From Hydrolagus colliei (Eukaryota): a DNA stretch of 64,000 nt. Positions 18,039-64,000 of this stretch are shown one piece after another. Location of the stretch: positions 1,240,001-1,304,000 of the forward strand of contig CM068760.1 of assembly GCA_035084275.1 (NCBI GenBank), written 5' to 3'. Numbering within the stretch: position 1 is the first letter of the stretch; each line of letters begins with the position of its first letter. The position numbers and the translations under genes are program-made. The notes below the pieces were generated by a model. It was not told the origin of the DNA and searched no databases. It was given only the letters and a program-made list of their open reading frames with translations.

Positions 18039-18427
18039 GACTCCACTGGCTCTCTGTCACAGAGTGGATCGACTTCAAGATTCTTACTCTTGTGCTTAAA
18101 TTCCTTCACTCCTTGGCACCTCTCTACCTCTCTAATCTCTCTCCTCACAGCAGTACCCGCTGACTCCGCTCTACTGGATCCGGCCTCCTACTTGTACCCC
18201 GAATACTCCACTCCACCATCGGCAGTTGTGCTTTCAGCCACTCCGCCCCAAAACTTTGGAACTCCCTCCCTCTGCCTCACCTCCTGATTTTTCATCTTCC
18301 AGTCGCACTTGAAGATCTTTTCAACTGCGCTGTTGGTCACCTTCCTCATCTCCCTGGCTCGGCCTCCAGCCATGCCACTGAAGCCACCCGATGTGGAGGG
18401 CCCTATATAAATGCATGTTGTTGTTGC
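18039..18427 (+). mobile_element. L2 LINE 3' fragment (second subfamily)
   Basis: ctccactggctc...caccatcggcagttgtgctttcagccactccgcccc...ctatataaatgcatgttgttgttg. Confidence 0.8.
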
Positions 18428-25525: not shown

Positions 25526-25703
25526 GAGCCTGGTCCAGCGAAAGTAGCAGTGACTGGTTCAGGGATTCCTGATGCAGAGAAGGTGCCCGATTCACGATCC
25601 AGCCTGTGGCAAGAAGAGCTTCAAGGCAGAGATGTGGAAGCAACTCAGAGTTGGCCTCTTCCTGATGCTAGCTCCCACGGAGGGTTGTTTTCTTCAAGAG
25701 AGA
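25526..25703 (+). CDS. MPRIP: MPRIP-like exon (EPGPAKVAVTGSGIPDAEKVP...LWQEE...)
   Basis: cccag| acceptor; AGA|gtgagt donor gives phase 1, matching the next exon; 178 nt. Confidence 0.88.
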
Positions 25704-26046
25704 GTGAGTCAATAGTTTGGTTCAACTGTCTTCTCTTTCCTTTTATGTATTTGGTCCCTGACCAACACTGATTTTCTGCATTTTTGCACATCAGTTGCCT
25801 CACTCTCTATCTCAAGGCGAATGCTGGGTAAAGCATCATTAATGCCGTTATCTCCAAACTTGATTTTTCAAACTCCCTCACATCTGACCTCCCTTGCTGT
25901 ATCTATGGAGTAGTGATTTTAGAGTGAGTTGATTCTGACAAGCCTTAAGTCTGAAACCTATGTTTTGTGTATTACAAGGCTATCGTCTTAAAGCATTCAA
26001 ACATAGTATTTTAATAAAGTATGGATGTGTGTTTCTCTTGGTACAG

Positions 26047-26521
26047 GTGACATGCGCCCCCCTGATGTTGCTTCTGATCACAGTTCTGTTAATGGAGATG
26101 AGGTGGATAGAGGAAGGATCCCACTGCTTGATCAGCAGAGACAGGAGATGCGTGTCCTTTCCCCTACTGGTAGCTCTTCAAGCAGGCATGGAATGGAGCC
26201 TGGGGGGGTTCCTCGTTGCCCATCACCAGTCTACAGCGATCCATTCCCCTCTGCTGGTAGCCTGCTTTCCAATGGATCACATATTAGTGGGTCCATGAGT
26301 TCGCTGGACTCGGAAGCAAGTGGAAGCACTGTAACAAGCACAGACAGTCACTACGCTGAAGGCATGGCACATAGAGCCTCGACACTGGCTGACATTCCCC
26401 GAGCCAGGAGAATTAGCAATAGGGAGACTTATGAGGCTGAAGTTAAAAAAATGGAAAAACGGACAAGAGCAAGAAGTCCAGGGAGAGATGAAGGCGAACA
26501 GTATTTTGGACAAGAAAGAAG
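26047..26521 (+). CDS. MPRIP: MPRIP-like exon, Ser-rich linker ending TLADIPRARRISNRE...RTRARSPGR...FGQER
   Basis: gtacag| acceptor, AG|gtactg donor, 475 nt, phase 1 to 2; RARSPGR..FG.ER motif recalled from long MPRIP/TRIOBP isoforms. Confidence 0.88.
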
Positions 26522-33189: not shown

Positions 33190-33334
33190 TCGTCGCTCAA
33201 CTGTAATAGAGAAACTTGAAGCTCTGGAGCTGGAGAATGCTGATCGAATGGAGACTGATCAGCTTGCAGGAGAAGCAATGCCCAGTGAGTCACGTCAAGG
33301 GAGAAGTGAAACAAGACGTTTCCAACGGAGAGAG
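33190..33334 (+). CDS. MPRIP: MPRIP-like exon (RRSTVIEKLEALELENADRMET...RQGRSETRRFQRRE), GC donor
   Basis: tttag| acceptor, phase 2; similarity ends at GAG|gcaagt (phase 0); 145 nt. Confidence 0.88.
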
Positions 33335-35251
33335 GCAAGTCGTGCAACAAAACTTGTTTCTTGCTTGGAAATAAATACTTTAAAACCTGAGCTATTCTGG
33401 GTTTTTAAATCCCACTCAGTAAACACATTAAAGACTGGCTAGCTTCTGCATAAGCCTGAGCTCTCTACTGAAAGTATTGTTTAATGAGTCAATTGGATCG
33501 ATATTTTTTTTCTATTTAAAAAAACATGCTGGGAAAGAGGAAGAATTTCAATTAAAATTAGTTAAACCTGTTCCTGTAATTTTTCTGGGGGTTCCATGTC
33601 CAATGTGCATCCCCCCACTGTCCTGCCCTTGTAGCAAAAGTCACCTCATCGCATGTACGACAGGTTCGCTCAGATCAGTCTCCTGTTTCTAACTCTCACT
33701 GGAACATCTGGATCTTATGGACAAAATGTTTAACCTCGTCTCCCATTGAAAATTACAAACTGTTTAGTTTGAGTGCGACATCCAACCGATTAGAGTAGGG
33801 AAAGCTCACGGCATTTATAAGTGTGGATTCTAAAACTTGAGAGTACTGTCCCAAGATTGTTTCACCCTGCCCCCAAATGATCAGCATATTGTTAGTTATA
33901 TGAAGGATGAAATGTTTGCAGTCGATCAGACACCAGATAAAAACAAAACCCAAATCCTTAGACACTGCTATCTTTTGACTTTGGGAATCAATTTCTAATC
34001 AAGATCATTGTTCACAATGGGGTCCAGCCTTTTTTTTAATGTTACCCATTCTTTGTGAAAAGTCCTAGAACTGAAGGGTTTATTCATTATTCATTAACAC
34101 ACCCTCTTCCCATCTGTGATCCAAAGCCACATGGCAGTTATTATGGTTCGAAAAGCTTGGAAAACCATTTCAACTGAAAATGTTTTGCTGAAAATAGTCT
34201 TGCCAACGTTGAAGTCTTAATGTTTAATGCGGTCTAAATAGCTAGTCTTGATCACAAAACATCAAATGAACAGCCCCCTGTTTCCTACCCCGGGGTTTGA
34301 TGCATCTGTACTTAATTAGCATTCTCTTATTTTCTCCCTCAATTAAATGCTTTCTCATGAGTCACTTTGTTTAAATAATTGAAGAGTACTAAATATGTGG
34401 ATATTTAATTTCTTAACCCTTTGAAGGCACTAGGAACATTGGCACAAAAATAAAAAGTTGCATAACAGTTGGGTTTTTACTCACGGATCATCCTGAGAAA
34501 TGTTGCTGTAAGGGAAGAGTATTGTACGTTGAAAGTACTTTCTACCTCTTTATTTCCTTTACAACACACAGCATAATTTAGCTATCGGCATGACTGTTAA
34601 TGAATGTTTGTCAGAGTTGGGACCAGTTGGCATTCTGCTTAGGCCGAGAGGAAAGAGATTTTGAATTTAGTACAAACTGAGTTATAGTTCAGTACATAGC
34701 TGACACTGAATTTTAAAATTCATTTGGTTCCTGTCATAAAGCATTTTTCTATCAAGTTTTCCAACTAACCAAGGAGTTCATTGTTGCACTTTCCAGGAAT
34801 TTCCTTATTAACGCACCAGAGGTGGTGATTTTCGCTATCCTTATTAAGGATAAGGATCAATGCAGCAAAGTCATGCAGTTAGCTTAGCCAATGCACTACA
34901 AGAAACTTGATTTGAAGAGCCGAGTGTGTTGGTTTATTCTTGCTCTGTTGAATACAGCATTCATTACCTGAAGACTCGGAATGTATTGAGCTTTCCTCCA
35001 GATAATTATGGCTGCAACCAAAAATTATTAAATTCAGAGTAGATCTAGCTGAAGCTGAGACTGAAAGGTCAGCAATCAAAATGTAACTGTTATTAAGGCT
35101 TTCAAATGATTCACCTGCCATTAAATACTTTCAAGATTTTCTATTCGTATGCAGCACAAGTTTTTTTATAGGTTGGAGTTAACCATAACAGAGCCCTGGG
35201 ACATCCTCCCAATGTAAGAAATGCATACAAATGTAATCTGTTGTTGTGTAG

Positions 35252-35359
35252 GAAATGAGAAAAGAAGCAACCCGAGGGAGAGATTTTCATTCCTCTTCCA
35301 TACCTCCGCTACGCCGGGCAAAATCGCTTGATAGGCGAACAACTGAATCTATAATGACG
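35252..35359 (+). CDS. MPRIP: MPRIP-like exon (EMRKEATRG...PPLRRAKSLDRRTTESIMT)
   Basis: gtgtag| acceptor, ACG|gtaaga donor, 108 nt; RRAKSLDRR motif. Confidence 0.9.
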
Positions 35360-35789
35360 GTAAGATTATTAATGACATCAATATTCGCCTACAAATACAG
35401 TCATTACATTTGTAAATCCTATGAAGTACTTTTGCGATGTTTTTAGCTGTAAGACACTTACCACATATTTACAGAATTGTTAGAAATCTGGCTGGATTGA
35501 TATGAATGTAACTGTATGCTGTTTATAATTATCACATTATAAACTCAGTGGTTTGAGTAATTATTGCAATAACTGAAAGTAACTCTGCAGAGCATAATAT
35601 GGCATTAATGTTTTTGGTTCTATTGTAATAACTATTAAAATACCTATAAAGTTAAATCTTATTCTATTTTGGCCAACAAATCCCCCAAATAAAATTGGTC
35701 CCTCACTCCATGGCTGTTTATTGAATGTTGCTGTTCACACATTAGCTGCTTCATTTTGCCAACAAAATACAACAATTTGCATTGATAGT

Positions 35790-39933: not shown

Positions 39934-39990
39934 CCTGATTTACTGAACTTCAAGAAAGGGTGGATGGTGAAACTTAATGGAATGGGTGAG
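39934..39990 (+). CDS. MPRIP: MPRIP-like exon, PH2 start (PDLLNFKKGWMVKLNGMGE)
   Basis: ttttag| acceptor, GAG|gtaaga donor, 57 nt. Confidence 0.95.
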
Positions 39991-41588: not shown

Positions 41589-42981
41589 ACTATTTGGAGA
41601 TGCACAATGTGAATGGTGCATATACAGATTGGGGGTGGAGAGTATGTCCTCTGTACGTCCTCTGATTTACGTAGCAGTTATGTAGTTGTAGCCTGAATTC
41701 CAGCCTAACTTCTGTATACATGCATGTAACACCTGACAACTCAGTTTTATTACTTGTCAATGTCAGTACCAATATGTTTGCTCAATGATTAAACTTCTAC
41801 TAGTTTATGATGTTGGTATGCAGTACATGGGCAGTTTGGAGCATATGCGCGTGCAAACACCAGGGAGGTGGAAGGTGAACTAGATGGATCTTGGTCTTTT
41901 TTCCTAGCATTTCTTAGGATGTTTTAACTCTTTACCATTATTTGAAATGTTCTGAAAAATTAATAATCTGGTAACTCTTAAGAATTACACACAAAATATG
42001 GGATCATAATAGCATAAGGTTTAAAATGTGTACTTTTAAGTCCACTATAATGGTATTTTGTCAAAATGCATTGTTTTGGGAATTTTGTGGTGGAAAAATA
42101 GTGAATAATCTAAACAATTGGTTTTCCTTCATGATAAACTGTTGTTAAGAATTTCCAAATGTATATCAGTTTGTTTTAAAAAGCTGGCATCTTTTAGAAG
42201 TTCTATTAAATGGTTGAAATGCCCTTTCATTTAGTTAATTGATATTATTTGAAAGTTATTTTGGATTCATGGTTGTGTAGCAGCTTTTCTCTCGGATCAT
42301 GTGAATCAATGGAACTCATTTTGTGCTTAATGCAGAGTCTTCCTAAGTTGAATAGTTTCAGAAAGTGTAGGGTTGATATTATGTAAGAGTTAAAACCCAA
42401 TTTATTATGTCACACATGAAGATCACATCCGATATGCATGTATTAACTAAGACGTTTTGAAAATAGTTTCCTTTGCACTAATGAAATGTAATTGATTCAA
42501 TTTGATTACAATGGTTTAAATCAACATAAACAAGAAGAAAAATGTTAAAATACTTTATGATAGACAAGTTACCAAGTGGGGAACAGAATGATGGTTCTAG
42601 GGTTAACTGGGCGTTTACGCAGAGAGACCAGACCGCCTGTGTGTCTGCTCAAACTAAGTACGACGTCATTGCTGACCTTTGTTGAGGTATCTGTGCAGAC
42701 TGAAGACTTTGATGAATATTTCAAACAGTGAGTTTAGAGAAGAAGGAATGTGGAACAGTAATCAAAGCATATTCACTTTTACAAAATGAATACACATTCC
42801 ATTGGCATTTTCAAAAAGCTGTTGAAACATATTACTGTAATAGGCGCCTTCATTGGAGTGCTAAATGTACTTGAAGAGAGCACTGCCTTTTCGGAAGTGT
42901 TTGTGCAGTACCATTTGCAATATCATAGTTCATCAGAAAATGAGCTTACCCTGCAATCACTTTTCTTTTTCTGTTTTTCAG

Positions 42982-43050
42982 TGGAAGAAATACTGGTTTG
43001 TACTGACTGACCACAGTCTGCGGTACTACAAGGACTCCATAGCTGAGGAT
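42982..43050 (+). CDS. MPRIP: MPRIP-like exon, PH2 (WKKYWFVLTDHSLRYYKDSIAED)
   Basis: tttcag| acceptor, GAT|gtgagt donor, 69 nt. Confidence 0.95.
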
Positions 43051-43574
43051 GTGAGTGCTACACATGCCGTTCCTGTTTTCCTACCTCATCCCCATATTAG
43101 TGTTTGTTGTTGATATTTGGTCTCTTTTCCCTTCTCCTTAATATTGAAAATGACTTGCCATTTTATGATGAAGGGGTGCCATTTTCTGTGAAATTGTAAC
43201 ATTTTGGGGAACCCAGAGTAGGTTATTTGTTCCATCGAGTTCACTCCGCCATTTTCTTAGGCTGTGTTTTGTTTGGTCAGCCGAGTGTTTGAGCTGTGTA
43301 GAAACCTATCACCAAAACTTCAGAGAATATCCAAACCAGACTTGAGAACTCCAGGAAGGACACCTACACATGGAACTCCTGTGACTGGAATGAAAGCCTC
43401 GCTCTCTCCAGGGACACACATTCTTGCTTTTGATCAAATTAAATTCTGCAGATGAACGTGGATTATGGTTGATTTCAATAACTTCTGCTAAAGATCAGAA
43501 ATGTTAATATGTTGGTTGTCCGTATGATGATATTTAAGCAGCCTAATTGGTAACTAGTTGGCTTCTCATTTTAG

Positions 43575-43664
43575 GCATCAGATCTGGATGGTGAGATTGA
43601 CTTGTCTACCTGCTACAATGTAACTGAATATCAGGTGCAGAGAAATTATGGATTCCAAATTCAC
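43575..43664 (+). CDS. MPRIP: MPRIP-like exon, PH2 ([30 protein letters not shown])
   Basis: ttttag| acceptor, CAC|gtaagt donor, 90 nt. Confidence 0.95.
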
Positions 43665-44390
43665 GTAAGTTCATTGGTTCTGAAAACCTACTTCCCTCTT
43701 AAAACTGTACTGGCGTCATGCTCTGCTGCTGTCGGATGTAAAGAGCATTGTTCAAGCGTTCACCAGGGGAGTTGCCATGCAGCATAACTTGCTGTTTACA
43801 GCCCCCATTAATGTTGAAACATTTTTGAAGTCATTCAGGGAAAGCTTCTGTTAATTCTGTATATTGTTTAATACCGTGTACAGTAGGGTCCTGCAGTATG
43901 CAATAGGAACAACAGAATTTAGTCTTGCAGATCAGGGTATGATCTAGTGCAAACGGTCTGAATTTGGTGTTCAGGGCAAACGCTTTTGTTAAGTGCTATT
44001 AACCACTAAGCTAATTACAACTGTACTGACAGTTCTGGTCTCTATTAATAAATCTTTTTCATTTGTTGTGCTGTTCTTCTTGCTGTCTTGAGGTTTTGTG
44101 CAAAAAAAGTGTTTTCTCTAATGCTTTTCGACAAATCTACAGCAAAAAATATGTGTTCATGTCTAGATTTATTTAATTTTTCACATGTTTGTAAGTATTG
44201 TTTTGGGAAATACTAGCACTGCTGGCACTAGTAAGTGTTGGTGACCACGTGCTAAGAACGAATGGGTTAAAAATATACTTGATAACTCTATTGGCAGAGC
44301 TAGCACCAGCATAGGCTTGCTGTGCTAAATGGCCTTCTCTATTCTATGATTTCTATGAGATAATCCAGATAGTTTTCATTCATCTTACAG

Positions 44391-44500
44391 ACGCAGGAAA
44401 CTGTGTATACCCTCTCTGCGATGACTGCTGGTATTCGGCGCAATTGGATTCAGGCGATAATGAAAAATGTCCGCCCTTCAACAGCACCAGATGTTGCCAG
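44391..44500 (+). CDS. MPRIP: MPRIP-like exon, PH2 end ([36 protein letters not shown])
   Basis: ttacag| acceptor, AG|gtgaga donor, 110 nt. Confidence 0.95.
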
Positions 44501-44760
44501 GTGAGAAATCCCCCATAACCCTACCTGGGAAAGTATCAGCTGCTTATTACTAAGAACTGAAGGATGTCAATCATCAGATGGTTGCCATTGCAGACTTGTG
44601 TCATTTTGCCTCAGTTATTTTTTCAGGTTTGGGTGAGAGTAACCTGCCCTGTTTGATTTACTTTTCTTTGCCAATTGGTGACTTCTCTGCAGTGGCAACC
44701 ATCTGATCATAATGTTTAGTTGGTTGAATTTTAGCAATGTTTGACCCTGTTTTATTTCAG

Positions 44761-45328
44761 CAGCTTGCCGGAGGAGCAGTGTGCCGCGATGCCCCCAGAC
44801 ACCAACCTGAAACATGACAGCAAATCTGACTCTCCATCTTCCGAGACGTCATCTGTCGGCAAAGAGACTGGGCAGCGAAGGAGTCGAGCGCGTGACCGAA
44901 GACGCGAAGGTAGATCGAAAACTTTTGACTGGGCAGAATTCAGGCCAATAGCACAAGCCTTGGCACAACAGAGAGCATCAAAATCCGATCTATGTGACAG
45001 CCGTGTGGAAAGTCTCAGCTCACCCCCACCAGAACTGAGTGATTGGGAGCGGACTAAACGGCGGGAGGAACGTAGGAAAAGATACGAAGCGGTGACGGGA
45101 ACTTCAGGTTCAAGCTCATTTGATGGAGGCAGGATGGAATTTGAATCGTCCCTCACCTCGCCACCCCCAGAACGACAGAAGAAAGTACACGATGAAATTG
45201 AGGAACATTGGCAACAGGTGGAGCGGACACCCCTCAGGGAAGAGCGGAGGGTACCGCTGGCCACAGTTACACCACCAGGTTCTCAGACAGTGCAGATTGA
45301 CAAACTCCTGGAAACCCACGCAAAAGAG
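44761..45328 (+). CDS. MPRIP: MPRIP-like exon (SLPEE...RRREGRSKTFDWAEFRPIAQALAQ...VERTPLREE...AKE)
   Basis: tttcag|cag NAGNAG acceptor, GAG|gtaggc donor, 568 nt. Confidence 0.93.
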
Positions 45329-46467: not shown

Positions 46468-46605
46468 CTTGAAGATTTGAAAACCCAGTTGGAGCACTGC
46501 CAGCAAGAACTGTCAGGCTCGCAGAGGTTCAGGGCAGAGCTTGAAGCCCAACTGAAGTCTGCCATGGAGCGTGAGCAGCAGGTTCGGGCAGGTTATATCT
46601 CACAG
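46468..46605 (+). CDS. MPRIP: MPRIP-like exon, coiled-coil start (LEDLKTQLE...REQQVRAGYISQ)
   Basis: atttag| acceptor, CAG|gtaaga donor, 138 nt. Confidence 0.93.
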
Positions 46606-47586
46606 GTAAGAAAGTTAGAAAGCCCTGTGCGGGCAGCTCACCCTTTACATGTAGAGCAAACTTGCTCCTGTTTGAAACTCTTTGCATGTTTTGTAAACTG
46701 ACAACTTGCCAGAAGTTTTTTTTAAATGCATGGACTGCTGCATGAAAACATGGAGAACTGAACCATTGGTGCTTTTTATGCCATTAATAGCAACCAGCGT
46801 GCAATGAAACCGTGGAGTCTGTAGTTTACGCTTGATGAAACAAACTGGGAGATCAAGATGGGAGTGGGGTGAAGGAGAGCAGTTACATTTAGTCTTATTC
46901 TATATTTTAGGCAGGCATAAGAGGAGAACTTAAGGTATTGTACATGTTGGCTTTAAAAAGTAGTAGTGTTGGAAATGTCTTTGGGGGAGGAAAAGATCAG
47001 CTGGATATCTGATGTGTGGAAACCATTGCCATGACTGACCACAGATGCATGTCCCCTATACAAGGACATTTTCCTAGCACATTCCCTACCTGGAGGGGCA
47101 CACCCTACATACATACCCTGCACACCCTACATACCAATTTCGTGGGGTGGGGAAATAATGTGCGGTTTGGCAAAAGAATAGTTGTTGTGGAACTGCTGGA
47201 ATTTCACTAGCTAAAACATAGTTTTAGGATCAGAACCCAAACTAGCATTGATCTGTTTGTAAATAACTAGCAAATAATGGATGGCTGTTTGTTAAAAGGA
47301 ATTTTCCTTTTGAAAACAATCCCATAAAGCTACATTTTGGGAGTTTTTCTCTTCAGCTTTACTCAGAGTTTTATATCTTTCATTTTCATCACCATTTTTT
47401 CTCCTTACTTTTATCATTTGGGGGGCAGAACATCTTTGTGTTACGTAGTCATAAGAACAGATGTTTTACAGAAAATGTAATGTTCAGCTGGATTATGATG
47501 CTTGTGTTTGTTGTAAGATCTACAACATGGTTTAAGTAACGTAAATGAAATGAATGACATCTAATGTGCAAAGCAATAAATACATT

Positions 47587-47822
47587 GGGGTCTGATTTGC
47601 GACACTTGCAAACAAAATTTTGTAGCATTATTTAGCAAGCGTTAATTAATTGGTTTGCAAACTTCGCAGTTAGGCAATCGGGAAATCCCGTTTGATTTGG
47701 AATTTGCTGGCCATGAATTTCATGTTGCGATTAATAATAATAATTATTATAATTAATATAATATTATTATTAAGCTGCAATTAACTGAAGAAATCTTGTT
47801 TGCATATATCAAAATTAGACCA
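47587..47822. mobile_element. MITE-like element with imperfect ~30-bp terminal inverted repeats
   Basis: gggtctgatttgcgacacttgcaaacaaaattt versus reverse complement of the right end, tggtctaattttgatatatgcaaacaagattt. Confidence 0.55.
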
Positions 47823-48679
47823 TATTTTCCAATATCGGATAGATTAAAGGCTGAACAATAATGAATCCATTAGTTTGAACCCTTTTTATATACATTTTAA
47901 AAGACGAGCACAGGAATGGCGCTCTATAATACAATTTGATCGGCTCATTGATTCTGGAATAGCTATATTATCTATTTCAATCTTTTTGATGTTTGCCTCT
48001 ATGAATTAAATCGAAGTATGTCCTGAGTAGCCTATTCTATTTTTGAATTTTGATGTTGTGGTTGTTAAACACTGAATCAGAATCATGGTCTCTCGGTGAA
48101 AGGCATGTAACACTGATGCAATCGTGGGACAAAAAGTGTAAACATTAGCTGCAATATCACAGAAGTAATGGCAGGGGATTATTGCCCGTGATTTTGATAG
48201 GTCTGAAATTTACAAGCATCACAGGTATGAGTAATTTGAGTTCTTCCTCACAAATGGAATAAACTAAATAGCGCACTGCTGTGTTTACAGTGTTTTTCCC
48301 CATAATTTAGACTAAATATAGACAGTGTTACTGAATTTTCATAACATAGATGAAACATTTACAATTGAACTGTAAGATCTGCTTTCTCACTCATCCATTA
48401 GTATGACTGGAGCTCTGTGTAATGGGTACCTTGACATCTGTTTGGAAAGGCTCAGGTATCAAAGGCTTGGGGATGAAACCTTCACAAAGATTTTAATACT
48501 TTATAAAGTTTTAGTTGCATACAAGTTAAGTGAGTTTTTTTTTAAATCACTTTGCTTGTTGGCTCGTTCTTTTAAGATAAAGAGTTCCAGTTGGTCATTA
48601 TCCTGAACAAGTCATCCAGTTTAACCCAAAACTGGTTAGAATTATACCTTATAAAATACTCGAAAGGTAGTTACCGAAA

Positions 48680-48930
48680 GTTATAATCCTTCGGTGAGGG
48701 AATCCAGAACGGGGGAACATTATCTTAAAATTAGAGGTAGGCCATTTATGAGTGAATCCAGGAAGCATTTCTTCGCACAAAGGATTGTGGAAATCTAAGG
48801 TCAATAGATATTTATTAGGTAAGGTTCTCGAGGTTGGGTAAATGGGGTTGAGGTACAGATCAGTCTTGATCTAATAGAATGGCGGTACAGGCTTGAGGAG
48901 CTGAATGGCCTCCTCTTCCTAGGTTCCTAA
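48680..48930 (+). mobile_element. CR1-type LINE 3' end
   Basis: cttaaaattagaggtaggccattt...ttcttcgcacaaaggattgtggaaatct...gagctgaatggcctcctc, typical of CR1 RT end and 3' UTR. Confidence 0.75.
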
Positions 48931-50956
48931 AGGCCAGTTTGGTATTTATTTAACATTTGGTTGTCCTGATTTCTTGGGAGTCGTTGACCAAAGAAATGTA
49001 GGATTGGTGCCTTGTTGAGTTATCTGTTTACCTGGTTGAATTCTGTACAAAATTGTGCTGACTTCTGGAAAGTTTACAGTGAACCTGTCACGCATGCAGT
49101 TAGATACTCAAGATTTAAGTGCTATTTAAAACTGTTCTGATTGATCTCACTAGTTACCTATTTCAGCACTGCTCCACTTAGTAAAGATTCTTCTGCTTCA
49201 TTTATTCACTTTATCACCCACCGTACAATACGAACTGCATGTTGACAAAAACCTTTCTACCGCTCCACAGTGCACTGCACCAAATTCACCAGCTGCCACA
49301 TGACCACTATGTTTACCTGAACTCTCAGTATGTCCCAGAATATAAAACCAATAGATCATTTTATTTTTCAAAATTACAATAATTTCAGTGGGAGAAAGAA
49401 TAAAAATTTATATTTCTGTCACTCATTGTGCTTCCTCTATAAAGTGCTTTGCTTGAAAGAAATATTACAACTTTCTCCTTGTGATGCAATGTAAGCACAG
49501 GTCCAATTGAAGATAGAGCTGGTGCTCTATCTTGGAAAATGTACTTCAAACACAAACCTTTGAGTTTACCCAAACCAACAATCTTTTCAGTAAGGTTGCA
49601 AATTTTTGTTTTTTCCTCACATGATTTTATGTCCATTAGGATCTGGGTAGTGACTGTCCTGCCTAGTTTTATTCATGGTGTTTGTGACCGACAGAGAGGA
49701 GACTTCTCATCCATCACGAGAGAGGTTTGGATGAAGAATGCCATGGTGCCATTTTGATCTAATCCTTCAGGACACATACTGCCTTCTCATGTTTCTTAAT
49801 CCCGTCCAGTGACCTAACTTTAATCATCTGCCTGGTAACCTGTTTCAATTAATCACCCAAGTTGTAAAGAAATATTTCCTGGTGGCTGACCTAAACACTC
49901 CCTTCAGAAACCCTGAACATGTGCCGTCTTTTCCTAATAGCATATACAGTATTGACCAAGGTTCACCTTAGCGCTTAATACGCTCCAAATATAGTCACCG
50001 GAGAGTATGTGTATTCTATTCCACTTACAGGATACTCCGAAGCATTGTGGTGGGTTTCTGTACATGTGAGACCTGGCTGACCAATTTTTTTTAAAAAAAT
50101 CCAGTCCTCTGAGAGATTTCTTGCATCAGAAGAGTGCTAGTCGATATAAATCTTTTTCTAACTCTTTCTACTTCATGTGGAGTAGCATTGAACACTGGCA
50201 GAGTTTGATGCCAAGCTGGGGAGAAGGGGTAGGTGACTGTAGGGGTATGTGATTCCATATTTTTTTTAAAAAAAAATATGAATTGTTTAAAAGTCTTGAT
50301 TTCATTTTTGATAAGCAATGCCAACTCATTTGAATTATAGATGGAATAAAAAGTTGCTTTTTTTTTTAAAAGCATCAAAAACGTTGAATGTGAAATAATG
50401 TGTAATTATTTTAGCAAAAAACATAAAGAGTAGGTTGTTTTATGGATCTTTAAACATTGGCCAAAAAGGGGTAATCCCTGACAAATGTTCAAAACCCTCA
50501 TAGGGACAAACATTGATCTGTCGTCAAATCATTGATTTTCAAGATTATTCAAACTTATCAACCTGAAATCCAGGGTGTCATTTTTTGATCAACCGCTAAT
50601 AATGTTTCTAATAGTATGAAGTTGTCCATAAATCTTTGGTAAAAAAAAACTGCAGATGTATACCACCTTTCTAGGTGGAATGTGTATACATTTGATGCAT
50701 GTTTTCTGATTCATATCAGAAGTGCTATATGTGTGATTGTCATTGTAGTATATAATATAGAAACTTGTCAGTGCTGGATCATCAGTCATGCACCCTTACC
50801 AAATGCGTTACCTAAATCGCCCATGTTATCCCCTGTCTAGTGTATCATCTAACATTACCCAGGTTTGCTAGATTTTACTAACTGCGGGTTTGGGGATTTT
50901 TCTTTAATTAAAATAGACAATCACAATTTTTTTGACCCAAGTCTGAAGTGTTTGTT

Positions 50957-50962
50957 TTTATT
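50957..50962 (-). terminator. Polyadenylation signal AATAAA of the nested gene
   Basis: TTTATT on + strand, about 26 nt past the TAA stop. Confidence 0.65.
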
Positions 50963-50987
50963 CAATTTCAAATGATACTCTTAATTC

Positions 50988-51278
50988 TTACGTAGCAACG
51001 TGGCATTTAGAGAGTCCTCTCATGGACATTCGATGCTGCTTCAAGGATTCGTTAACACGTCTATTGGTCTTTGCTTTAACATTGGTATCCATATCCTCCT
51101 GAGGCTTAGAGCAGCGTTTACGGGGCACGATCTTCGGTGCTCTCCTCCTATAGATTGAATGGCGAGGTCTACGAATAATCCTCCTTCGATGCCTTACCCG
51201 GCATCTGGTTTTCCTCATCTTTCTCCCATGTCGTTTGCGGACGCGACTGCGTCTGGGTCGATATCTTGCTTTGGTCAT
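50988..51278 (-). CDS. Nested intronless gene: spermatid-specific basic nuclear protein S1-like (protamine/transition-protein-like), 96 aa
   Basis: MTKARYRPRRSRVRKRHGRKMRKTRCR...RRPRHSIYRRR...KTNRRVNESLKQHRMSMR; 27 Arg + 11 Lys of 96 aa; Kozak ACAACCATG; AATAAA at 50962-50957; colinear with my recollection of Scyliorhinus S1 (TKSRYR...MRKTRCR...RRPRH..YRRR...NRRLNESLKQHR). Confidence 0.85.
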   Translation of the reverse strand: MTKARYRPRRSRVRKRHGRKMRKTRCRVRHRRRIIRRPRHSIYRRRAPKIVPRKRCSKPQEDMDTNVKAKTNRRVNESLKQHRMSMRGLSKCHVAT

Positions 51279-51339
51279 GGTTGTTTTGACTGACAACTGT
51301 TTGAGTCCAATCCCACCAATTCGAGATTTGTTAGTGAAC

Positions 51340-51490
51340 ATTAGCCCCCGTCAAGGTCCCCTTTTATTGAGTAGGACCTCCATTGTTGAATGACCTAGGC
51401 TGTTGGTATTGATTATGATGTAACCTGACATATTGAATGACAGCATTAACGGGAAAGGCATTGGCTCCCAAATTTGGTATTGATTATGTT
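51340..51490 (-). promoter_or_regulatory. Putative proximal promoter of the nested S1-like gene
   Basis: Minus strand: TATA-like AATAAAAG (51368-51361), TGACG half-CRE (51353-51349), AGCCAATG CCAAT box (51466-51459), and a 15-bp direct repeat at 51403 and 51474. Confidence 0.5.
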
Positions 51491-52454
51491 GCGTTGGCAC
51501 TGCCTTATAAGGTATTATGTCACTCACCCCTCAATGTGTATTAACACACTACATTATAATTTCCCTTAAGGCTTTCATGCCAAATATGGTCAAATTAATC
51601 ATGTGGCCATCAATTTCTGCTAGTACCTGATATGTTTCCTCCCGCTCACTACACCACCAACACCGACCATTATCTTCTCTTCTGCAGATGCATCTTCACC
51701 ACTCTGCACCTGAGAAGGTGGGGGTGGTGGGGACCTTGATATATGCAGGAGATGAGCATTGGGCAATCAGTAGCTCATACTTCTACACCACACAGACGGG
51801 TAGACAATAAACCCGAAAAGCTTGTATTGTACTTGCATATTGGAAAGACTTCCTTATTATTAGAGTAGTCTGATTATATAATGCCACACCAGGATCTAGG
51901 TACAGATGCACAGAGCAGAATTCTGAGATTTTTGATGGATCCAAACTATGAAGTCAGTGCTATTTTTCATGATTGTTGATAGTTGTAATAGTATTTGTGG
52001 TGTAAATAATATAGAGAGAAAATGTATAGAGGGATCCAAGATTAAAAGCAATGGATGTAAGATTTGATGGGAGAAAAATAACCCTGCTTAACGTTAAATA
52101 TTATATGCTAACTATGCATTTGTAGTACTTGCCTCCTGACCAATAATGCTAACTTTCCATGTGCATGTTTCCTGAAATACTAACCATTATCTTTCTTTCT
52201 TTTGTTGTTGTTTTTTTGCTTAATTTACGCAACTAATAGTTAATAGTTTGGCCTTTTTGCTTACTCACAGAAAACATATTTTTGTTCCTTGAACATTTCT
52301 GACCTTTTGAAACCTACGTGAAGAAAAAGTATTATATTTACAAACCAATAATTGTTTTAAGCTCCATTATCGGGACTGAGAAGCAAAACGTAAACAGTTT
52401 ATTCGAAAACCTTTTTCCAACTATGTTAACCACTGTCTGGTCCCCTTTTCTAAG

Positions 52455-55400
52455 CTGGAGCCACCTTTGGCAAGTTCAAACGCCTGGCAACAGCTGCAGA
52501 AGCTGAACCAGGACCTACAAGCTGAGCTGGAAGTTCAACGGCAGAAACAGGAGGTGGCTAATACACACGCCCAGAGCCTTAAAAAGAACTACCAGGATGC
52601 CAAGGAACTCCTGAGACAGCAAGAGACAAAAATACAAACCTTACAGGCCAGACTGGACATTTCTCTGTCTGAGGTAGCAATTAATGAACAGTCGTTATCC
52701 AAAGCTCAAAATGAGCTGCGCCTGGAACGTCAGAAATACAAGGAGCAGGCTGATGAGTATGAGCGCAAGTTAAATATGTTCAGTAACCAGTTGAGAGATA
52801 GTGAAGAAAAGCTTAGGGAAGTGGAAGGATTGCTTCTTGAAAAAACACAGGCTTTTAGGGACCTGGAAAGGCAAATGGCTCTTCAGAAAGACTATCAACG
52901 AGAAGTGAAGCGGCTCCAAGAGCATCTGGAAGATGCCAGCAGCAGACTGCTGTGCAGTGAACAAGGTGTTATTCTGAGTGAAGAACGTTTTCAGAAACAG
53001 TATGAGTGTCTTAAAGAGAAATATGAGAAGGAAAAAGAGCTCTTGTCACGCAGTGTGCGAGAGGCTGAGGAGAGGGTGAGAGAGTATGAAGATCGCCTCC
53101 AGACTCTGGAGGTTCAATTGCAGAGAATTCAAAAAGAAAAGCTGGCCACCTCTTTTAAAAGCAGTGAGGTGGTCAGGCAAATGGAGGAGCATGTTGAGAT
53201 GAGCGAGGGGACAGTGAAGAAACTGACGCAGGACCTAGACATTTTGTCAACTGAGAATGGGCGATTGACTCAACGCTATCAGGAAATAGTTAACCAGCTA
53301 ACTGAAGCCGACCGAGAAGTTGAAGGGCTTAAACTGGAATTGGTGAAAGAACGAGAAGGATATCGGGATTTGAATGATGATTTTGAAAAAGCCGTTCAGG
53401 AGGTGAATGTTCTGAAAAATGAATTAGCTGAAAATCATTTTAAGATGGTGGCAGTGAAGGAACCTTATGAACGAGAGCTTGCAAAGAAAAACAAGGACTT
53501 GAACGAGGCTTTAATTAAGCTGGAAGCTTTGGGCAGCAGCTTGGAGGAAACTGAAAAGAAGCTTCATCTTAAGGAGGCTACCCTCAAAGGCCTTGGCTGG
53601 CAGGTACCAACAGAGGTAGATCTGCTCCTAGAGAAAAAGGAAGAGCTACAGATTAGATTAGAAGATGCAGAGTCCAGGTTAGCCGAACAGGACATGAAAC
53701 TCAAAGTAGCTGAGAGCAGTTACAGGGAAATCCTTTCCCAAAACAGTGAGCTCAAATCAAAGCTGGAGGTTCATGAGCAACACATAGCAGAGATAAACCT
53801 CCAAAGGCTTACAAACAAACTTGAAGCCGATGAAAACATTCCGTATTCTTCAGCTGCCATATCTGAACAGCGGGTTCAGAGCTCAGTGAAATCCAGTGCG
53901 CGGCTTTCTAGTGAGTTAGTGGCAAGGCTTCAGAGTTTGGACAGTCGCTTAACTGCACTGATCGATTCACAAGGCACACAAACTGAACCAATTTGGTTTT
54001 CAGTAATGCCATCTTCCGATATGGACACTGAACAATCTTGTCAGACAACAATGGCAGATAGTTCTATCGCAGATCTGCAAAAATATCTTACAATCACGCA
54101 CTCACTTGAAACTAAGCTGCTGATAGCCGAACAACAGATGAAAGCTGAAACTTCATATCCTCTAAGTACATCCACAAGCCCGCAGTGCAGTTCAGAAAAC
54201 TATGGAAGAATGTCTGAGCCTGGAGTGCATCCAAAAGAGCTATTAGATGGAAACCAGACTCCCATATGCTCACACTTTGTGCAGGTTGCTAGTTCCGAAG
54301 ACAAGCATAACATGCTAGTGCAGGCCACCAACTCTGAGTTCCAAGCACTAGAGGCCAAACTTCTTCAGTTGCGTAACGTTTTGGAAGGTTTACAATCCAA
54401 AGCTGACAAACTTGCTCAAGGAAAGGAAGTGGAACAGCATGGGCAACAGGTGTCTGAGTTGATACGTGTCCTGGGCAGCTCTGTACAATACCTACAACAA
54501 ATGGAGGCAGATTTAGCCAGGAAGAATAGAGCATTTAGTAGCGAAGACACTTTAGTAAGAGTTTCATTAACTGAAGAGGAAAAGCTGAAGTATTTGATAA
54601 ACAAACTGTCCCTCGAAGCAGCAGCACTTAGCAAAGTTGCCAGTATTTTAGAGAATTCAGAATCAGATCTAATAAGCACTTTGCATGAAGTTAGAAAACA
54701 TTCTGAAAGCATCAAATTGCCTTCAGTATCCAGTGAAGAAGTTGATGCCCAAATAGGATATTCTGTTCTCAAAAAAGTATTGATAGAAGGAACTTTTTGG
54801 GCAAATTTGCCCAAAATGTATGAGAGTCAGACTTCCAATGTGGAAGAACCTGTGGGTGAACCCATCAACAGTTTTTTGAGCATGATGGCAAGCAGTATGT
54901 TAATAAAGGGTGAGATGATGTTTTGGGCCCATAATATTTTGGGGATTTCAGAAGAAAAACTGCAACAGTTGAAAGTGAAATACAAAAAAATACATGACAG
55001 TAACAGCAAACATGAACGGATGCTTAGGGATGTTGTAGAGGGATTTGGGACTTGTTGCTTTGAAGCACTAATAGGGGAAATTGGTCGTGAATTATGTAAA
55101 ACCGAAGAGAATGAATCACTTTTATCCCCTTGTACCGAATCCCCAAAACTATCATCCTTGGCTATTTCGTCAGGTCAGGAAATTGAACTGGAGCATTCTG
55201 TTAGGACCGAATTGGCACAGCGCATTCGGGGAAATGCTTGTTTACTGAAACACGTTTCCCATTCTATTCAGTCCGGGGTAGATGATGATCTTGTCCTCTT
55301 GGCGAGGCAACTAGCTAATAGCATGGACTCTATACCTGCATTAAACAGGCATAGTGATGCAAAAGACATCTGGCCTCTCCTCCTTCAAGATGCAGTAATG

Positions 55401-56234
55401 CAAGCTGAATTATCGTATGTAATCTCAAGGATTCAGTTGCAAAAAGACCTTGCACAGGGTAATGAGATTCAGCTACGGCTGGAAGCTCAAGAGAAGGAAA
55501 ATGCAGGCTCGATTGCTTTATTACAGAACAAATGTGCAGCAGATCTACAGAAGCAAAAGCAAGAGCATGAGGTTGAGGTAATAAAACTAAGAGGAAATAT
55601 TGCAGAGCTTCAAAAATTAACTATTTCAGGTGCATTAATTGCCAGCACCACTCATATCCAAATTGAGGGTGAGCCAATTGACTCACTAGACAAAGCAATT
55701 GAATTGCAGGACATGGCAGCAAGGCATAAGAAGGAGCTGAGGGAAGTTCGAGAAGCATATGAAGCAGAGGTTGAGAAATTGAAAAGGGAGATAGCAAGGG
55801 CAGGAGAGACATTAAGACTAAAAACCGAGGAGAATGTGAAGGAAATTGATTCTTTAACGGTCTGCATGGAAAACCTGAAGAAAAAGCACGTTGGGGAGCT
55901 GAAGAGCCGGCAAGAAGAATTTAAGATTGAGAAGAAGGAATTGGAGCTCAGGCACTCTAGGGAAAAAGAGGAGTTTGTAAGAGAAATAGAAACTTTAAAG
56001 GAAAGCAGAGATCCGAAAGAGCTGGACCTTGTAAGTAATCTGAAGAGATCTGAAGAGCCGTCTACAAGACAGGGAGGTGAGCCATGTTCCATGACTCTGC
56101 TCCGAGCACGCATCGAAGAACTTGAGTCCCAGATGGATGTTATGAGAAGTGAGATAGAACAGCATGAACTGAAAGATGATGCAACATCAACATCTCTGCG
56201 ACAGAAATATGATAAAGACCTGGAGAATCTCAAG
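52455..56234 (+). CDS. MPRIP: MPRIP-like giant coiled-coil exon (3780 nt, 1260 codons), probably alternatively spliced
   Basis: ttttctaag| acceptor, AAG|gtgtca donor, phase 0/0 and therefore skippable in frame. AWQQLQKLNQDLQAELE, LLLEKTQ, DLNEALIKLEALGSSLEETE and LRQKYDKDLENLK resemble the large exon of long MPRIP isoforms. Confidence 0.9.
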
Positions 56235-58279
56235 GTGTCAAACGTGTTTCATAGTACTGGCTAGTAACTGCATGTTGGCTTGTAGCTCTAGACCTCGCTG
56301 CCAGCAATGAGCTGTGTTTGTGTCCTGTACTGTCCTCCAAACTGTATAGAAGGTAGACCTGCATGATGTACTGTTGAACTGGGCAAAGTCGGGGAAAGAA
56401 ACATTTTCAAATTCTGGGAAAAGCTGAATTCTAAAAACGTGGCTCGTATCTAATACTTAGTGAAATGTAAGGAACAATTTACATTTTTCTCAATGTACAA
56501 ATATCTTGCACAAGACCATCTAAATTCCGCATCGAAATTATTCCATTCCAGCCATCTTACAATCAGAGTTGAAGTTGTTCATACCAGTAATTGCCCAGTT
56601 CTTCTCTCTTCTGTTGTGTTTTGTGTGTGTGTTTTATGTGCCTACCTGTAGTCTTCAACAATCTTTTCAAATGCAATGCAACCCATTTACCTAATACATC
56701 TGGCTAATGATTTTTTAACAATTTCTGTATAATTGGCAGGCAACTTAATATGCAACACATCAGTTGGAAGGAAATCTTAAATGCTGTAAAGTCCAAACAT
56801 GAACTTTTTAACTTTTAAAAACTAATTTAGCTCCACATGTGCGACTCTGGAAGCCAAGATCGCTTTAAACATCTGTATTCAATATGAAATTATTATGCTA
56901 GCTATATTCTGTTGCTATGGCCTCCATTTGGCATTATTATTATTATTAGATATATTGAGCTCCTATGATCAGGCCCAACTCATTTCTGAATTAATAGTGT
57001 AATAATCCTAGTATTTGATATAGCACCTTTATCATTTGGAAATATCCCAACGTCATTCACAGTAATTACTAAAGTGAGTGACTGTGTTTGCAGGTGAATG
57101 AGATTCTCCTTAAGGTGTCAAAAGTTTTGACAAAATGTAACTTTCTGAACTCTTTTTGAAAGGAAAGTTTAATATAAATTTTGAGAAATCAAAAATGAGC
57201 AGAAAGTGTACTTGTGACACAGTCCTGAGTTGCGGGTAGCATTCGAGTGGCCTCACCCTTTATAATACTTTATAAATTACTCTTACCGTATATTTAGTGG
57301 GTTTGAATGCCTTTGAGAAGCATGTGCACTTCTAGCCTGATAGCAGCGTTGTAATAAGGTGGGCTGCCTTGCCTTTTGCAGTTTGTCTTGATGTTATGCT
57401 ACTAATGTACCTCTTCCCTTTTTTTTCTTTTTCAGTTGGCTACATGCATATCTGTCACACTTTTAGAGGCACTAATAATTTACTTTGCTTATCAGATATC
57501 AATATTAATCAATATCAATATAACGCAGTAAATACACTTAATGCAATTAACCTATTCAAAGGGGCCAAACGCATTTTGGGGCTCAGAGTAGTTAATAAAC
57601 TCTCTAAATAAAGCCTGAGTACTGTAATATGTTTTGAGGTGCTACCTGCCACTGCCCCTTTTTCTGGTGACTTGGGTTCAAATCTAACCAGGGATAGCAG
57701 ATCACCATTTCCTCTCACAAATGGTTGATAAAGTTCACGAGTGAACACATTTTGAGAAAATCTGTAGGTTTGCCTTTTGTTACGAGATTGTAAAAATTTA
57801 TGGCTGGGGAAGAAGCTGTTTTGAGATGTATTTAGTAGCCAGTAAATATTCAAACCAAAGTTGAGTTGTTGTAAAAGATGTGTATTCTCTAGTTTACATA
57901 GTGCAGGATGCTTTGACACCTGAATGCATCGTTTCAGTTTTGGGGTTGTCAATTGAGTTTGATGCTATATTAAAGTGTTGTTTTTGCCTTTGAGTTGATA
58001 GCACATATGAGGAACTTGGTATGAAACCCAAGATCACGCAGTATGTTCCACTGTTTTAATTTGTGAATGTGGACTTGAATTGAGACTGTGACTTCTAGTT
58101 AACTTTTGTACCCCTCAGTTATTGTAGTGGTATATCTCTCAGGACGACTCATTTGCTTGACCTTGTATGGCCCCAACAATTACACAGTGCCTTGTGGATG
58201 AAAATGCTGTGATATTCCAACATGTGGAGAATTTTCCACTCATCCTCATAACCAAAGATGTGTGGAGGTAGCCATTCAA

Positions 58280-61202: not shown

Positions 61203-61350
61203 GCTACATGTGAGCGTGGCTTTGCTGCTATGGAAGACTCTCATCAGAAAGTAATAGAAGAACTACATCGCCAGCATCAGCGAGAGCTGGTGAAACTGCA
61301 GGAAGATAAAGAACGTCTACTGGCTGAAGAAACTGCTGCCACCATCTCTG
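61203..61350 (+). CDS. MPRIP: MPRIP-like exon ([29 protein letters not shown]...[11 protein letters not shown])
   Basis: ttttag| acceptor, G|gtacgt donor, 148 nt. Confidence 0.95.
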
Positions 61351-63858: not shown

Positions 63859-63976
63859 CTATTGAAGCAATGAAAAATGCACATCGCGGGGAACTGGAGC
63901 GTGAACTGGAGAAGGTGCGGAAATCACAAAACAGCAACTTAAATGCTGATCTGGATGAAATCTGCAAACAGCACGA
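63859..63976 (+). CDS. MPRIP: MPRIP-like exon (AIEAMKNAHRGELERELEK...CKQH)
   Basis: ttttaag| acceptor, GA|gtacgt donor, 118 nt. Confidence 0.92.
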
Positions 63977-64000
63977 GTACGTGAGGGTCAAGGGTGTGGG

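What the first reader, a model, noticed from the sequence alone, without database searches (positions are those of the whole stretch)
50957..51368. Nested antisense gene for an S1-like spermatid chromatin protein inside an MPRIP-family intron
Seen in sequence: an intronless, CpG-rich 96-codon ORF (ATG at 51278 in ACAACCATG, TAA at 50988) with about 40% Arg+Lys and 3 Cys. It starts with a protamine-P1-like ARYR motif, has AATAAA 26 nt after the stop and a TATA-like box about 85 nt upstream. Recalled, not searched: the dogfish spermatid intermediate proteins S1/S2 replace histones before protamines, and S1 has the same colinear motifs (TK.RYR, MRKTRCR, RRPRH..YRRR, NRR.NESLKQHR). Inference: this is a complete, functional chondrichthyan transition-protein gene nested in a cytoskeletal gene and likely missed by annotation. 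I know of no described genomic context for S1, and it could inform the origin of transition proteins and protamines.
Basis: partly seen in the sequence, partly recalled or inferred. Interest (0 to 1): 0.92.

Follow-up and report, generated by a model that had tools for sequence, protein, structure and literature searches.

The report
Chimaera-type S1 spermatid protein gene
An intact small gene inside an intron of the MPRIP gene encodes a relative of dogfish protein S1, which temporarily packs sperm DNA before protamines; the protein family is known, but its gene location was not found described.

Summary
A 96-codon minus-strand ORF runs from ATG 51278 to TAA 50990-50988. It has 27 Arg, 11 Lys and 3 Cys. 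Its CpG o/e is 1.12 against about 0.35 around it. AATAAA begins 26 nt after the stop, and an AATAAAA box lies 84-90 nt upstream of the ATG.

It is a true homologue of Scyliorhinus canicula spermatid-specific protein S1 (P13275; E 1.2e-17, 62% identity). It is 81% identical, end to end and without gaps, to an unnamed 96-aa Callorhinchus milii model (E 8.5e-36). A profile search found only 8 Callorhinchus models plus S1. An exhaustive HMMER scan of 1.84 billion representatives found one cluster. Pfam found nothing, so no link to mammalian TNP1/TNP2 or protamine P1 was detected.

The host is MPRIP (long isoform) on the + strand. The gene sits antisense in the intron 46606-52454, 1.2 kb upstream of the 3.8-kb giant exon.

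Constraint is indicated by the same-length ORF in two lineages, retained CpG and absence of gaps. Expression was not shown: the one RNA-containing run was contigs only, of unknown tissue.

Verdict: a new member of a known family in a newly seen genomic context. Moderate interest.

The parts
50988..51278 (-). Complete single-exon coding sequence (96 codons + TAA) of an S1-family spermatid nuclear basic protein
   Evidence: sequence, ORF, translation. E 8.5e-36 to Callorhinchus A0A4W3H8T8 and E 1.2e-17 to S. canicula S1 (P13275); alignments; composition and CpG o/e 1.12.
50957..50962 (-). AATAAA polyadenylation signal, beginning 26 nt after the stop codon
   Evidence: Similarity of a related species' contig and of a paralogous contig ends at 50928, 29 nt beyond the signal (table 8). 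That fits a 3' end near a CA followed by an A-run at 50934-50927. The 3' end itself is inferred.
50928..50987 (-). Putative 3' UTR (about 55-60 nt)
   Evidence: Inferred from the AATAAA position and from where contig similarity stops (records 4 and 10). No read ends were seen.
51362..51368 (-). TATA-like AATAAAA box, 84-90 nt upstream of the ATG
   Evidence: A start about 25-30 nt downstream would fall just past the in-frame ATG at 51341-51339, which would explain why homologues start at MTK (inference). A paralogous contig of the same genome is still similar up to 51376 (record 13).
51349..51353 (-). Half-CRE-like TGACG between the TATA-like box and the ATG
   Evidence: motif scan. Consensus match only, with no evidence of function.
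46606..52454 (+). Host intron of MPRIP (5,849 nt) that contains the antisense S1-family gene
   Evidence: tblastn of fetched MPRIP proteins places colinear exons at 46489-46602 and from 52446. Searches show GT at 46606 and AG at 52453-52454; a contig of a related species' run joins the two exons (28 loose letters before 52453 match the exon end at 46605 with 2 mismatches, read by eye).
52455..56240 (+). Giant coiled-coil exon of the long MPRIP isoform, 1.2 kb from the S1 gene's 5' side
   Evidence: 1265-aa open frame; 104 hits with E of at most 0.001 among 8000 scored candidates, with 'myosin phosphatase Rho-interacting protein', MPRIP/mprip and 'protein outspread' among the names given by sources (best E 8.8e-242, a Latimeria model the source calls GRIP and coiled-coil domain-containing protein 2); exon mapping.

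Best explanation
This is an intact, single-coding-exon gene of the S1 family of chondrichthyan spermatid nuclear basic proteins. It most likely belongs to a holocephalan (chimaera-type) genome and is orthologous to Callorhinchus milii A0A4W3H8T8. It is transcribed antisense from within the MPRIP intron that precedes that gene's giant exon. By analogy with dogfish S1, whose biochemistry I recall and did not read here, the mRNA would be made in post-meiotic spermatids. The protein has an Arg/Lys-rich N-terminal part (residues 1-58, predicted without secondary structure), then a short acidic patch (Q-E-D-M-D) and a conserved, possibly helical C-terminal part (NRR.NESLKQHR). It would bind DNA electrostatically, displace histones during nuclear elongation, and later be replaced by protamines. 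The 3 Cys could allow transient disulfides. Shown here: identity, completeness, family membership by sequence, nested antisense position and signs of constraint. Inferred: expression, timing, promoter and function.
For: Homology: one search gives P0001 (E 8.5e-36, 81% identity, 100% coverage) and S1/P13275 (E 1.2e-17, 62% identity over 69%). One search, the profile search, found 9 proteins with E of at most 1 among 3953 candidates, all of them family members. One search shows 39 invariant columns among 6 sequences. One search shows 15 invariant and 28 nearly invariant columns among 10.

Orthology: one search places the window as sister to P0001 (support 89/82), and both share the C-terminal GLSKCHVAT.

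Start codon: homologues start at MTK, including P0114, an 88-aa Met-started Logan member of the S1 cluster.

Constraint, four lines:
- (a) The length (96 aa) and the stop position are identical in the window and in Callorhinchus, with no gap.
- (b) CpG o/e is 1.12 in the CDS against 0.34-0.36 around it. 13 of 27 Arg codons are CGN, and 4 are CGA, each one transition away from TGA.
- (c) Against a related species (run X1) the CDS contig shows 35 differences and 0 gaps in 268 nt. The flanking intron contigs carry at least 8 listed indel events in 659 nt, which predicts 3.25 events in the CDS stretch, P(0) = 0.039.
- (d) In neutral simulations the ORF stays intact in only 10-38% of runs after 20-38 substitutions.

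Context: MPRIP exons are colinear on the + strand on both sides, and the flanking splice junction is confirmed by a spliced contig.
Against: No expression evidence. No listed holder of the stretch is on record as RNA. The one run that contains spliced RNA (X1) is of unknown tissue and held only as contigs. It covers the surrounding intron too (depth 10-16) with only slightly more over the CDS (24.7). So those contigs may be MPRIP pre-mRNA, DNA, or collapsed paralogues.

The window copy carries private changes at otherwise nearly invariant positions: Q60 where others have R, and V67 where others have L. The related species has R60 and L67. The window's tree branch is 0.21 against 0.046 for P0001.

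CDS nucleotide divergence from X1 (13%) is no lower than the intron's (8-16%). That fits fast evolution but also relaxed constraint or a paralogous comparison.

Other S1-like loci exist in the same genome (X2 records 10-13), so this copy need not be the expressed one. The promoter elements are consensus matches only.
Confidence: 0.8

Rival explanations
1. It is an intact but silent or decaying duplicate, a young unprocessed pseudogene of the multi-copy S1 family. Other paralogues elsewhere in the genome would supply the spermatid protein.
For: The family is multi-copy: 8 Callorhinchus models and extra S1-like contigs at about 85-90% identity in the source-like run X2 (records 10-13). This copy has private substitutions at conserved sites (Q60, V67) and a longer branch than its orthologue (0.21 vs 0.046). 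Its CDS differs from the related species as much as the intron does. No expression was shown.
Against: The ORF has the same length and ends as the Callorhinchus orthologue. CpG o/e of 1.12 persists in a CpG-depleted intron, with 4 CGA codons still unmutated. There are no gaps where about 3 indel events are expected. All invariant family blocks are kept. The end-branch length of 0.21 equals the family median.
Confidence: 0.15
2. It is a processed retrocopy of an S1 mRNA that landed by chance in the MPRIP intron. On this view the nesting has no history or meaning.
For: The coding region is intronless. A 7-nt A-run (50933-50927) lies just past the AATAAA, where similarity to other copies ends at 50928.
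Against: Similarity to a paralogous contig continues upstream of the TATA-like box to 51376, and after a 78-nt skip resumes from 51455 (record 13 and table 5). So copies share 5' flanking DNA, as in DNA-level duplication. No flanking direct repeats resembling target-site duplications were found around the gene. The A-run is only 7 nt. Whether any family member has introns is unknown.
Confidence: 0.04
3. It is a chance Arg-rich ORF or low-complexity artefact with no gene behind it.
For: 29 ORFs of 90 aa or more occur in the window, and Arg-rich sequence can give spurious matches.
Against: E 8.5e-36 and 1.2e-17 in a 5.8-billion-sequence database. The alignment is colinear, including the non-repetitive blocks MRKTRCR and NESLKQHR. 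The only hits are family members.
Confidence: 0.01

Closest known systems
Spermatid-specific protein S1 of Scyliorhinus canicula (UniProt P13275, SSS1_SCYCA)
   Same: Significant full-length similarity (E 1.2e-17, 62% identity in the best local alignment; 67% in alignment A1). Same size class (87 aa mature vs 96 aa). Same order of blocks: TK.RYR, MRKTRCR, RRPRH..YRRR, acidic patch, NRR.NESLKQHR. Very basic, with a few Cys.
   Different: The window protein has a longer C-terminus (GLSKCHVAT in place of VPV) and private substitutions (A4, P8, V13, H17, Q60, V67).
Callorhinchus milii uncharacterized proteins A0A4W3H8T8 (P0001) and 7 paralogues (P0002, P0003, P0005, P0110-P0113)
   Same: P0001 is 96 aa and 81% identical with no gap, shares the C-terminal GLSKCHVAT, and is sister to the window in the tree (support 89/82). 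It is the probable orthologue. Multi-copy status also appears in the window's genome.
   Different: 19% of residues differ. These models carry no name or function in the source. Their loci and exon structure were not visible to me.
Mammalian transition nuclear proteins TNP1/TNP2 and protamine P1 (Pfam TP1, TP2, Protamine_P1; accession numbers recalled)
   Same: Presumed role only: small, Arg/Lys-rich, Cys-bearing proteins that replace histones in spermatids (established knowledge for TNPs; recalled for S1). The N-terminal RYR resembles the protamine P1 N-terminus (recalled).
   Different: No detectable sequence relation. There were 0 Pfam families for the window protein at E up to 10, and no transition-protein or protamine family among the 4 chance-level matches of the 10 aligned members. 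The exhaustive profile search found only the family's own cluster. The 'ARYR' Ala is private to this copy. The locus (an MPRIP intron) is not the mammalian PRM1-PRM2-TNP2 cluster or the TNP1 locus (recalled).

Membership tests
S1 family of chondrichthyan spermatid nuclear basic proteins (type member P13275) | Significant, colinear sequence similarity to S1 over most of its length | tested here: met
   (E 1.2e-17, 62% identity, 69% of the query). (profile: S1 at 6.2e-34). (alignments with 39 of 6-way and 15 of 10-way invariant columns).
S1 family of chondrichthyan spermatid nuclear basic proteins (type member P13275) | Small size (about 87-96 aa), about 40% Arg+Lys, few Cys, Met-Thr-Lys start | tested here: met
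   (96 aa, 39.6% R+K, 3 Cys). (homologue lengths 70-96 aa; MTK start, Met removed in mature S1).
S1 family of chondrichthyan spermatid nuclear basic proteins (type member P13275) | Expression restricted to spermatids; nuclear, chromatin-bound | not testable with these tools
One search found no holder on record as RNA. One search gave contigs only, from a related species of unknown tissue, with depth over the CDS (24.7) close to the intron's (10-16).
S1 family of chondrichthyan spermatid nuclear basic proteins (type member P13275) | Transient: appears after histones and is replaced by protamines | not testable with these tools
   Needs staged testis zones and protein analysis. This is known for dogfish S1 only from recalled literature (Gusse & Chevaillier 1981, seen here only as a reference and one passage in PMC11607694).
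Mammalian transition proteins TNP1 / TNP2 | Match to the Pfam TP1 or TP2 models | tested here: not met
   (0 families at E up to 10). (10 family members scanned: 4 chance-level families, none of them TP1 or TP2). (no other cluster found).
Protamine P1 | Match to the Pfam Protamine_P1 model; conserved ARYRCC N-terminus (recalled) | tested here: not met
   (no match); position 4 is A only in the window copy and S or L in 8 of the other 9 sequences (P0113 lacks the N-terminus). No CC follows.
MPRIP (host gene) | Colinear similarity of exons to MPRIP proteins of other vertebrates | tested here: met
   (giant exon: 104 hits, with MPRIP and 'protein outspread' among the names given by sources). (14 colinear tblastn segments of the 2185-aa Latimeria protein P0006 on the + strand, 11356-63977, exon by exon).

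The most novel reading that the evidence does not exclude
The copy nested antisense in the MPRIP intron may be an old, positionally conserved (perhaps founding) locus of a chondrichthyan-wide S1 family that predates the holocephalan-elasmobranch split. If it also sits in that intron in Callorhinchus, sharks and rays, it gives the first fixed synteny anchor for a non-mammalian transition protein. One could then ask whether bony vertebrates lost a gene at this site, and so whether histone-to-protamine 'transition' proteins arose independently in cartilaginous fishes and mammals. Its spermatid transcription, 1.2 kb from the acceptor of MPRIP's giant exon and on the opposite strand, might also influence inclusion of that exon in germ cells.
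Probability: 0.2. Interest if true: 0.6.

Novelty: new member of a known kind. Interest (0 to 1): 0.42.

Why it matters
Dogfish S1 is one of the very few non-mammalian 'transition' proteins known at the sequence level. In the databases searched here, the family consists only of that 1980s protein entry, one unnamed Logan product, and eight unnamed Callorhinchus models. This window adds three things:
- A complete gene from another, probably holocephalan, genome.
- Evidence that the family is conserved across both chondrichthyan branches and is multi-copy.
- A concrete genomic address: antisense in an MPRIP intron, next to a RAI1/TCF20-like neighbour noted by the scan.

That address makes simple follow-ups possible, namely synteny checks, dN/dS, and testis RNA-seq or proteomics. 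It also lets annotators name an otherwise 'uncharacterized' family. It does not by itself connect S1 to protamines or mammalian TNPs, because no such link was detectable.

Tried and rejected
Chance ORF: rejected.

Second copy in the window: tblastn of 5 family proteins found only this locus. All other hits had E of 3.9 or more.

Link to TNP or protamine families: Pfam at E up to 10 gave 0 families for the window protein and only 4 chance-level, unrelated families among 10 members. Exhaustive HMMER gave 1 cluster, the family's own. The feature search of the ESM Atlas gave no usable hit.

Retrocopy: no target-site-like direct repeats, and paralogue similarity extends into the 5' flank.

Upstream 'tandem duplication': only an 18-nt motif is repeated (51403-51420 and 51474-51491). 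Not pursued.

Structure: AlphaFold2 on the 10-row alignment gave mean pLDDT 59.6 and pTM 0.19, with no secondary structure in 1-61 and a helix at 62-90. This was too weak for a fold search, so none was run.

Expression: the single look-up of sequencing runs and read-laying runs gave contigs only, so no strand, ends or level could be read.

Literature: searches for S1/S2, dogfish spermatid proteins, scylliorhinine, Chauviere, and chondrichthyan sperm nuclear basic proteins found no open paper that describes the S1 gene or its locus. One search found 0 papers for 'spermatid-specific protein S1' or 'S2'. I read passages only of PMC11607694, PMC13052469 (none of the 5 terms occurred) and PMC2110730. 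The primary S1 papers are in journals not held and are cited from recall. Supplements were not opened.

Earlier scan notes: none concerns S1. One notes a RAI1/TCF20-like gene 17 kb beyond the window.

dN/dS and conservation of the nesting could not be done, because no chondrichthyan DNA other than the window was obtainable.

Full report
**Observation**

The minus strand of 50700-51600 holds an ORF whose ATG at 51278 sits in the context ACAACCATG. It runs for 96 sense codons to a TAA at 50990-50988. One search gives its composition:
- 27 Arg, 11 Lys (39.6% together), 5 His and 3 Cys.
- 19 CpG, CpG o/e 1.12, GC 0.485.
- CpG o/e of 0.35 and 0.34 in the two intron flanks, and 0.36 over the whole window.
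- 13 of the 27 Arg codons are CGN.

AATAAA lies at 50962-50957, beginning at the 26th nt after the stop. An AATAAAA box lies at 51368-51362, 84-90 nt upstream of the ATG. A TGACG half-site lies at 51353-51349.

ORF length alone would not be remarkable, since one search lists 29 ORFs of 90 aa or more in the window. The homology below is what puts it beyond chance.

**Identity**

A search of 5.8 billion proteins returned 5 hits among 5 candidates:
- Four unnamed Callorhinchus milii models. The best, A0A4W3H8T8 (P0001), has E 8.5e-36 and is 81% identical over 100% of the query.
- 'Spermatid-specific protein S1' of Scyliorhinus canicula (E 1.2e-17, 62% identity over 69%).

One search confirms the accession P13275 for S1. 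It also shows that the S1 90% cluster holds a second, Met-started 88-aa product from a Logan assembly (P0114, sequence).

The 6-way alignment has 39 invariant columns, with the blocks TK.RYR, MRKTRCR, RRPRH..YRRR and NESLKQHR in the same order. Searching again with that alignment found 9 proteins with E of at most 1 among 3953 candidates: 8 Callorhinchus models and S1. The 10-way alignment keeps 15 invariant and 28 nearly invariant columns.

An exhaustive HMMER scan of 1.84 billion cluster representatives with the same profile found one protein, a Callorhinchus member (9.0e-30). So, as far as these libraries go, the family is confined to cartilaginous fishes.

Pfam has no model for it. The window protein matched 0 families at E up to 10. 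The 10 members matched only 4 unrelated chance-level families. No relation to TP1, TP2 or Protamine_P1 can therefore be claimed.

In the 10-way alignment, 8 of the other 9 sequences have S or L there and P0113 lacks the N-terminus. P0114 also has S.

**Which member, and which organism**

In a maximum-likelihood tree of the 10 proteins, the window groups with P0001 (ultrafast bootstrap 89, SH-aLRT 82). The other 6 inner branches are weak. The window and P0001 share the same length and the C-terminal GLSKCHVAT.

I therefore read the gene as the orthologue of A0A4W3H8T8 in another, probably holocephalan, species. The organism names were coded, so I cannot exclude an unpredicted ninth paralogue in Callorhinchus itself. 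The exact window protein is not in the 15-billion-protein collection.

**Context**

- The 1265-aa open frame at 52467-56264 on the + strand found 104 proteins among the 8000 scored candidates. Sources name many of them myosin phosphatase Rho-interacting protein, mprip or 'protein outspread'. The best hit has E 8.8e-242.
- tblastn of four of these fetched proteins against the window places colinear + strand segments for the 2185-aa Latimeria protein P0006. They lie at 11356-11508, 25496-25657, 26046-26546, 33194-33343, 35252-35371, 39934-39990, 42979-43056, 43575-43682, 44340-44498, 44759-45283, 46489-46602, 52446-56240, 61203-61253 and 63870-63977.
- The sequence shows GT at 46606 and AG at 52453-52454.
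- In run X1, a 3808-nt contig lies on the giant exon from 52453. It carries 28 loose letters before that point. Read by eye, they equal the end of the exon at 46605 with two mismatches. This is a spliced junction seen in a related species.

So the S1-family gene lies antisense in the 5,849-nt MPRIP intron 46606-52454. Its ATG is 1,176 nt from the acceptor of the giant exon.

I searched the host gene exon by exon only.

An earlier scan note places a RAI1/TCF20-like gene 17 kb past the window. RAI1 and MPRIP are neighbours on human 17p11.2 (recalled), which fits MPRIP orthology.

**Signs of constraint**

- (a) The window and Callorhinchus proteins align end to end, 96 vs 96 residues, without a gap and with the same stop.
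- (b) CpG is not depleted in the CDS although the surrounding intron is strongly depleted. Four CGA codons, each one transition from TGA, survive.
- (c) Against run X1 the main CDS contig (51024-51291) has 35 differences and 0 gaps in 268 nt. Intron contigs at 50324-50555 and 51785-52211 show at least 8 listed indel events in 659 nt. That predicts 3.25 events in the CDS stretch, P(0) = 0.039. This is an upper bound, because 19 further indel rows were not shown.
- (d) Neutral simulations from this CDS leave the ORF intact in 38% and 24% of runs after 20 substitutions, and in 20% and 10% after 38. The first figure of each pair is without tenfold CpG hypermutability and the second is with it.

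Each line is modest. Together they favour purifying selection against disruption.

**Evidence against, or missing**

- Expression is not shown. No holder of the stretch is on record as RNA.
- X1 contains spliced RNA, but it is held as contigs and its tissue is unknown. It covers the intron at depth 10-16 against 24.7 (plus a 2.8 contig) over the gene and 65 over the MPRIP exon. The gene contigs could be host pre-mRNA, DNA, or collapsed paralogues.
- CDS divergence from X1 is about 13%, no lower than the intron's 8-16%. The gene is either evolving fast, as sperm nuclear basic proteins often do (established knowledge), or the comparison is paralogous.
- Only 4 of the CDS differences were listed. 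They change codon 60 Q to R and codon 67 V to L, and leave D62 unchanged. The relative thus carries the family consensus where the window has private residues.
- The window's end branch (0.21) is longer than P0001's (0.046), although it equals the family median.
- The source-like run X2 holds one 12-kb contig nearly identical to the window (6 differences). It also holds short contigs 85-90% like parts of the gene and its 5' flank up to 51376, resuming at 51455. Paralogues therefore exist elsewhere in this genome, and this copy need not be the one that is used.

**Mechanism (inferred)**

By homology with dogfish S1, I take the product to be a spermatid nuclear basic protein. It would bind DNA through its Arg/Lys-rich first 58 residues. 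AlphaFold2 gives no secondary structure for 1-61 and a helix for 62-90, all at low confidence (mean pLDDT 59.6).

S1 replaces histones in elongating spermatids and is itself replaced by protamines. This is recalled from Gusse & Chevaillier and Chauvière et al. Here I saw only a passage and a reference in PMC11607694.

A transcription start about 25-30 nt below the AATAAAA box would fall just past the in-frame ATG at 51341. That would explain the MTK start. A 3' end near 50930 would give an mRNA of about 400 nt. Both ends are inference.

**Comparison and novelty**

By sequence, the gene is a member of the S1 family. By presumed role it works like, but is not detectably related to, mammalian TNP1/TNP2.

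New here:
- A further complete member.
- The finding that unnamed Callorhinchus models and this gene belong with S1, so the family spans both chondrichthyan branches and is multi-copy.
- The nested antisense position in MPRIP.

I found no open paper describing the S1 gene or its locus. Subscription journals and supplements were out of reach, so this is not proof that none exists.

I class it as a new member of a known kind and rate it of moderate interest (0.42).

Noticed in passing
window 52455-56240 (+): MPRIP here carries a 3.8-kb single giant coiled-coil exon (1265-aa open frame). It corresponds to the long, roughly 2,000-2,200-aa isoforms of coelacanth, gar and teleosts. A related species' run holds it spliced to the upstream exon.
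   Followed up: partly
window 16836-18290 (+), GC 0.54 at 17001-18000: A GC-rich island with overlapping ORFs on both strands. The ORF at 16836-17132 matches reverse transcriptase RVT_1 (E 7.9e-07, 29.4 bits, just under the 29.6 cut-off). It is probably a retroelement fragment inside an MPRIP intron.
   Followed up: partly
window 50928-51376 versus other loci of the same genome (run X2, records 10-13): Short contigs 85-90% like the 3' UTR, parts of the CDS and the 5' flank of the gene show that further S1-like paralogues exist elsewhere in this genome. One contig joins 50995 to 51302, with the part between not aligned.
   Followed up: no
window 51403-51420 and 51474-51491: An 18-nt motif is repeated 71 nt apart in the gene's 5' flank (94% identity). 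A paralogous contig skips 78 nt here (51376 to 51455). The alignment of the two units is otherwise poor.
   Followed up: partly
That would match the human 17p11.2 neighbourhood (recalled).
   Followed up: no
protein cluster of P13275: The only other member of the dogfish S1 90% cluster is an unnamed 88-aa Logan product (P0114), seen on 2 contigs, the longest 1474 nt. It starts with Met and differs from the published protein at several residues, so it is a variant, a paralogue or a sister-species copy. No RefSeq or NCBI gene model appears in the family.
   Followed up: partly
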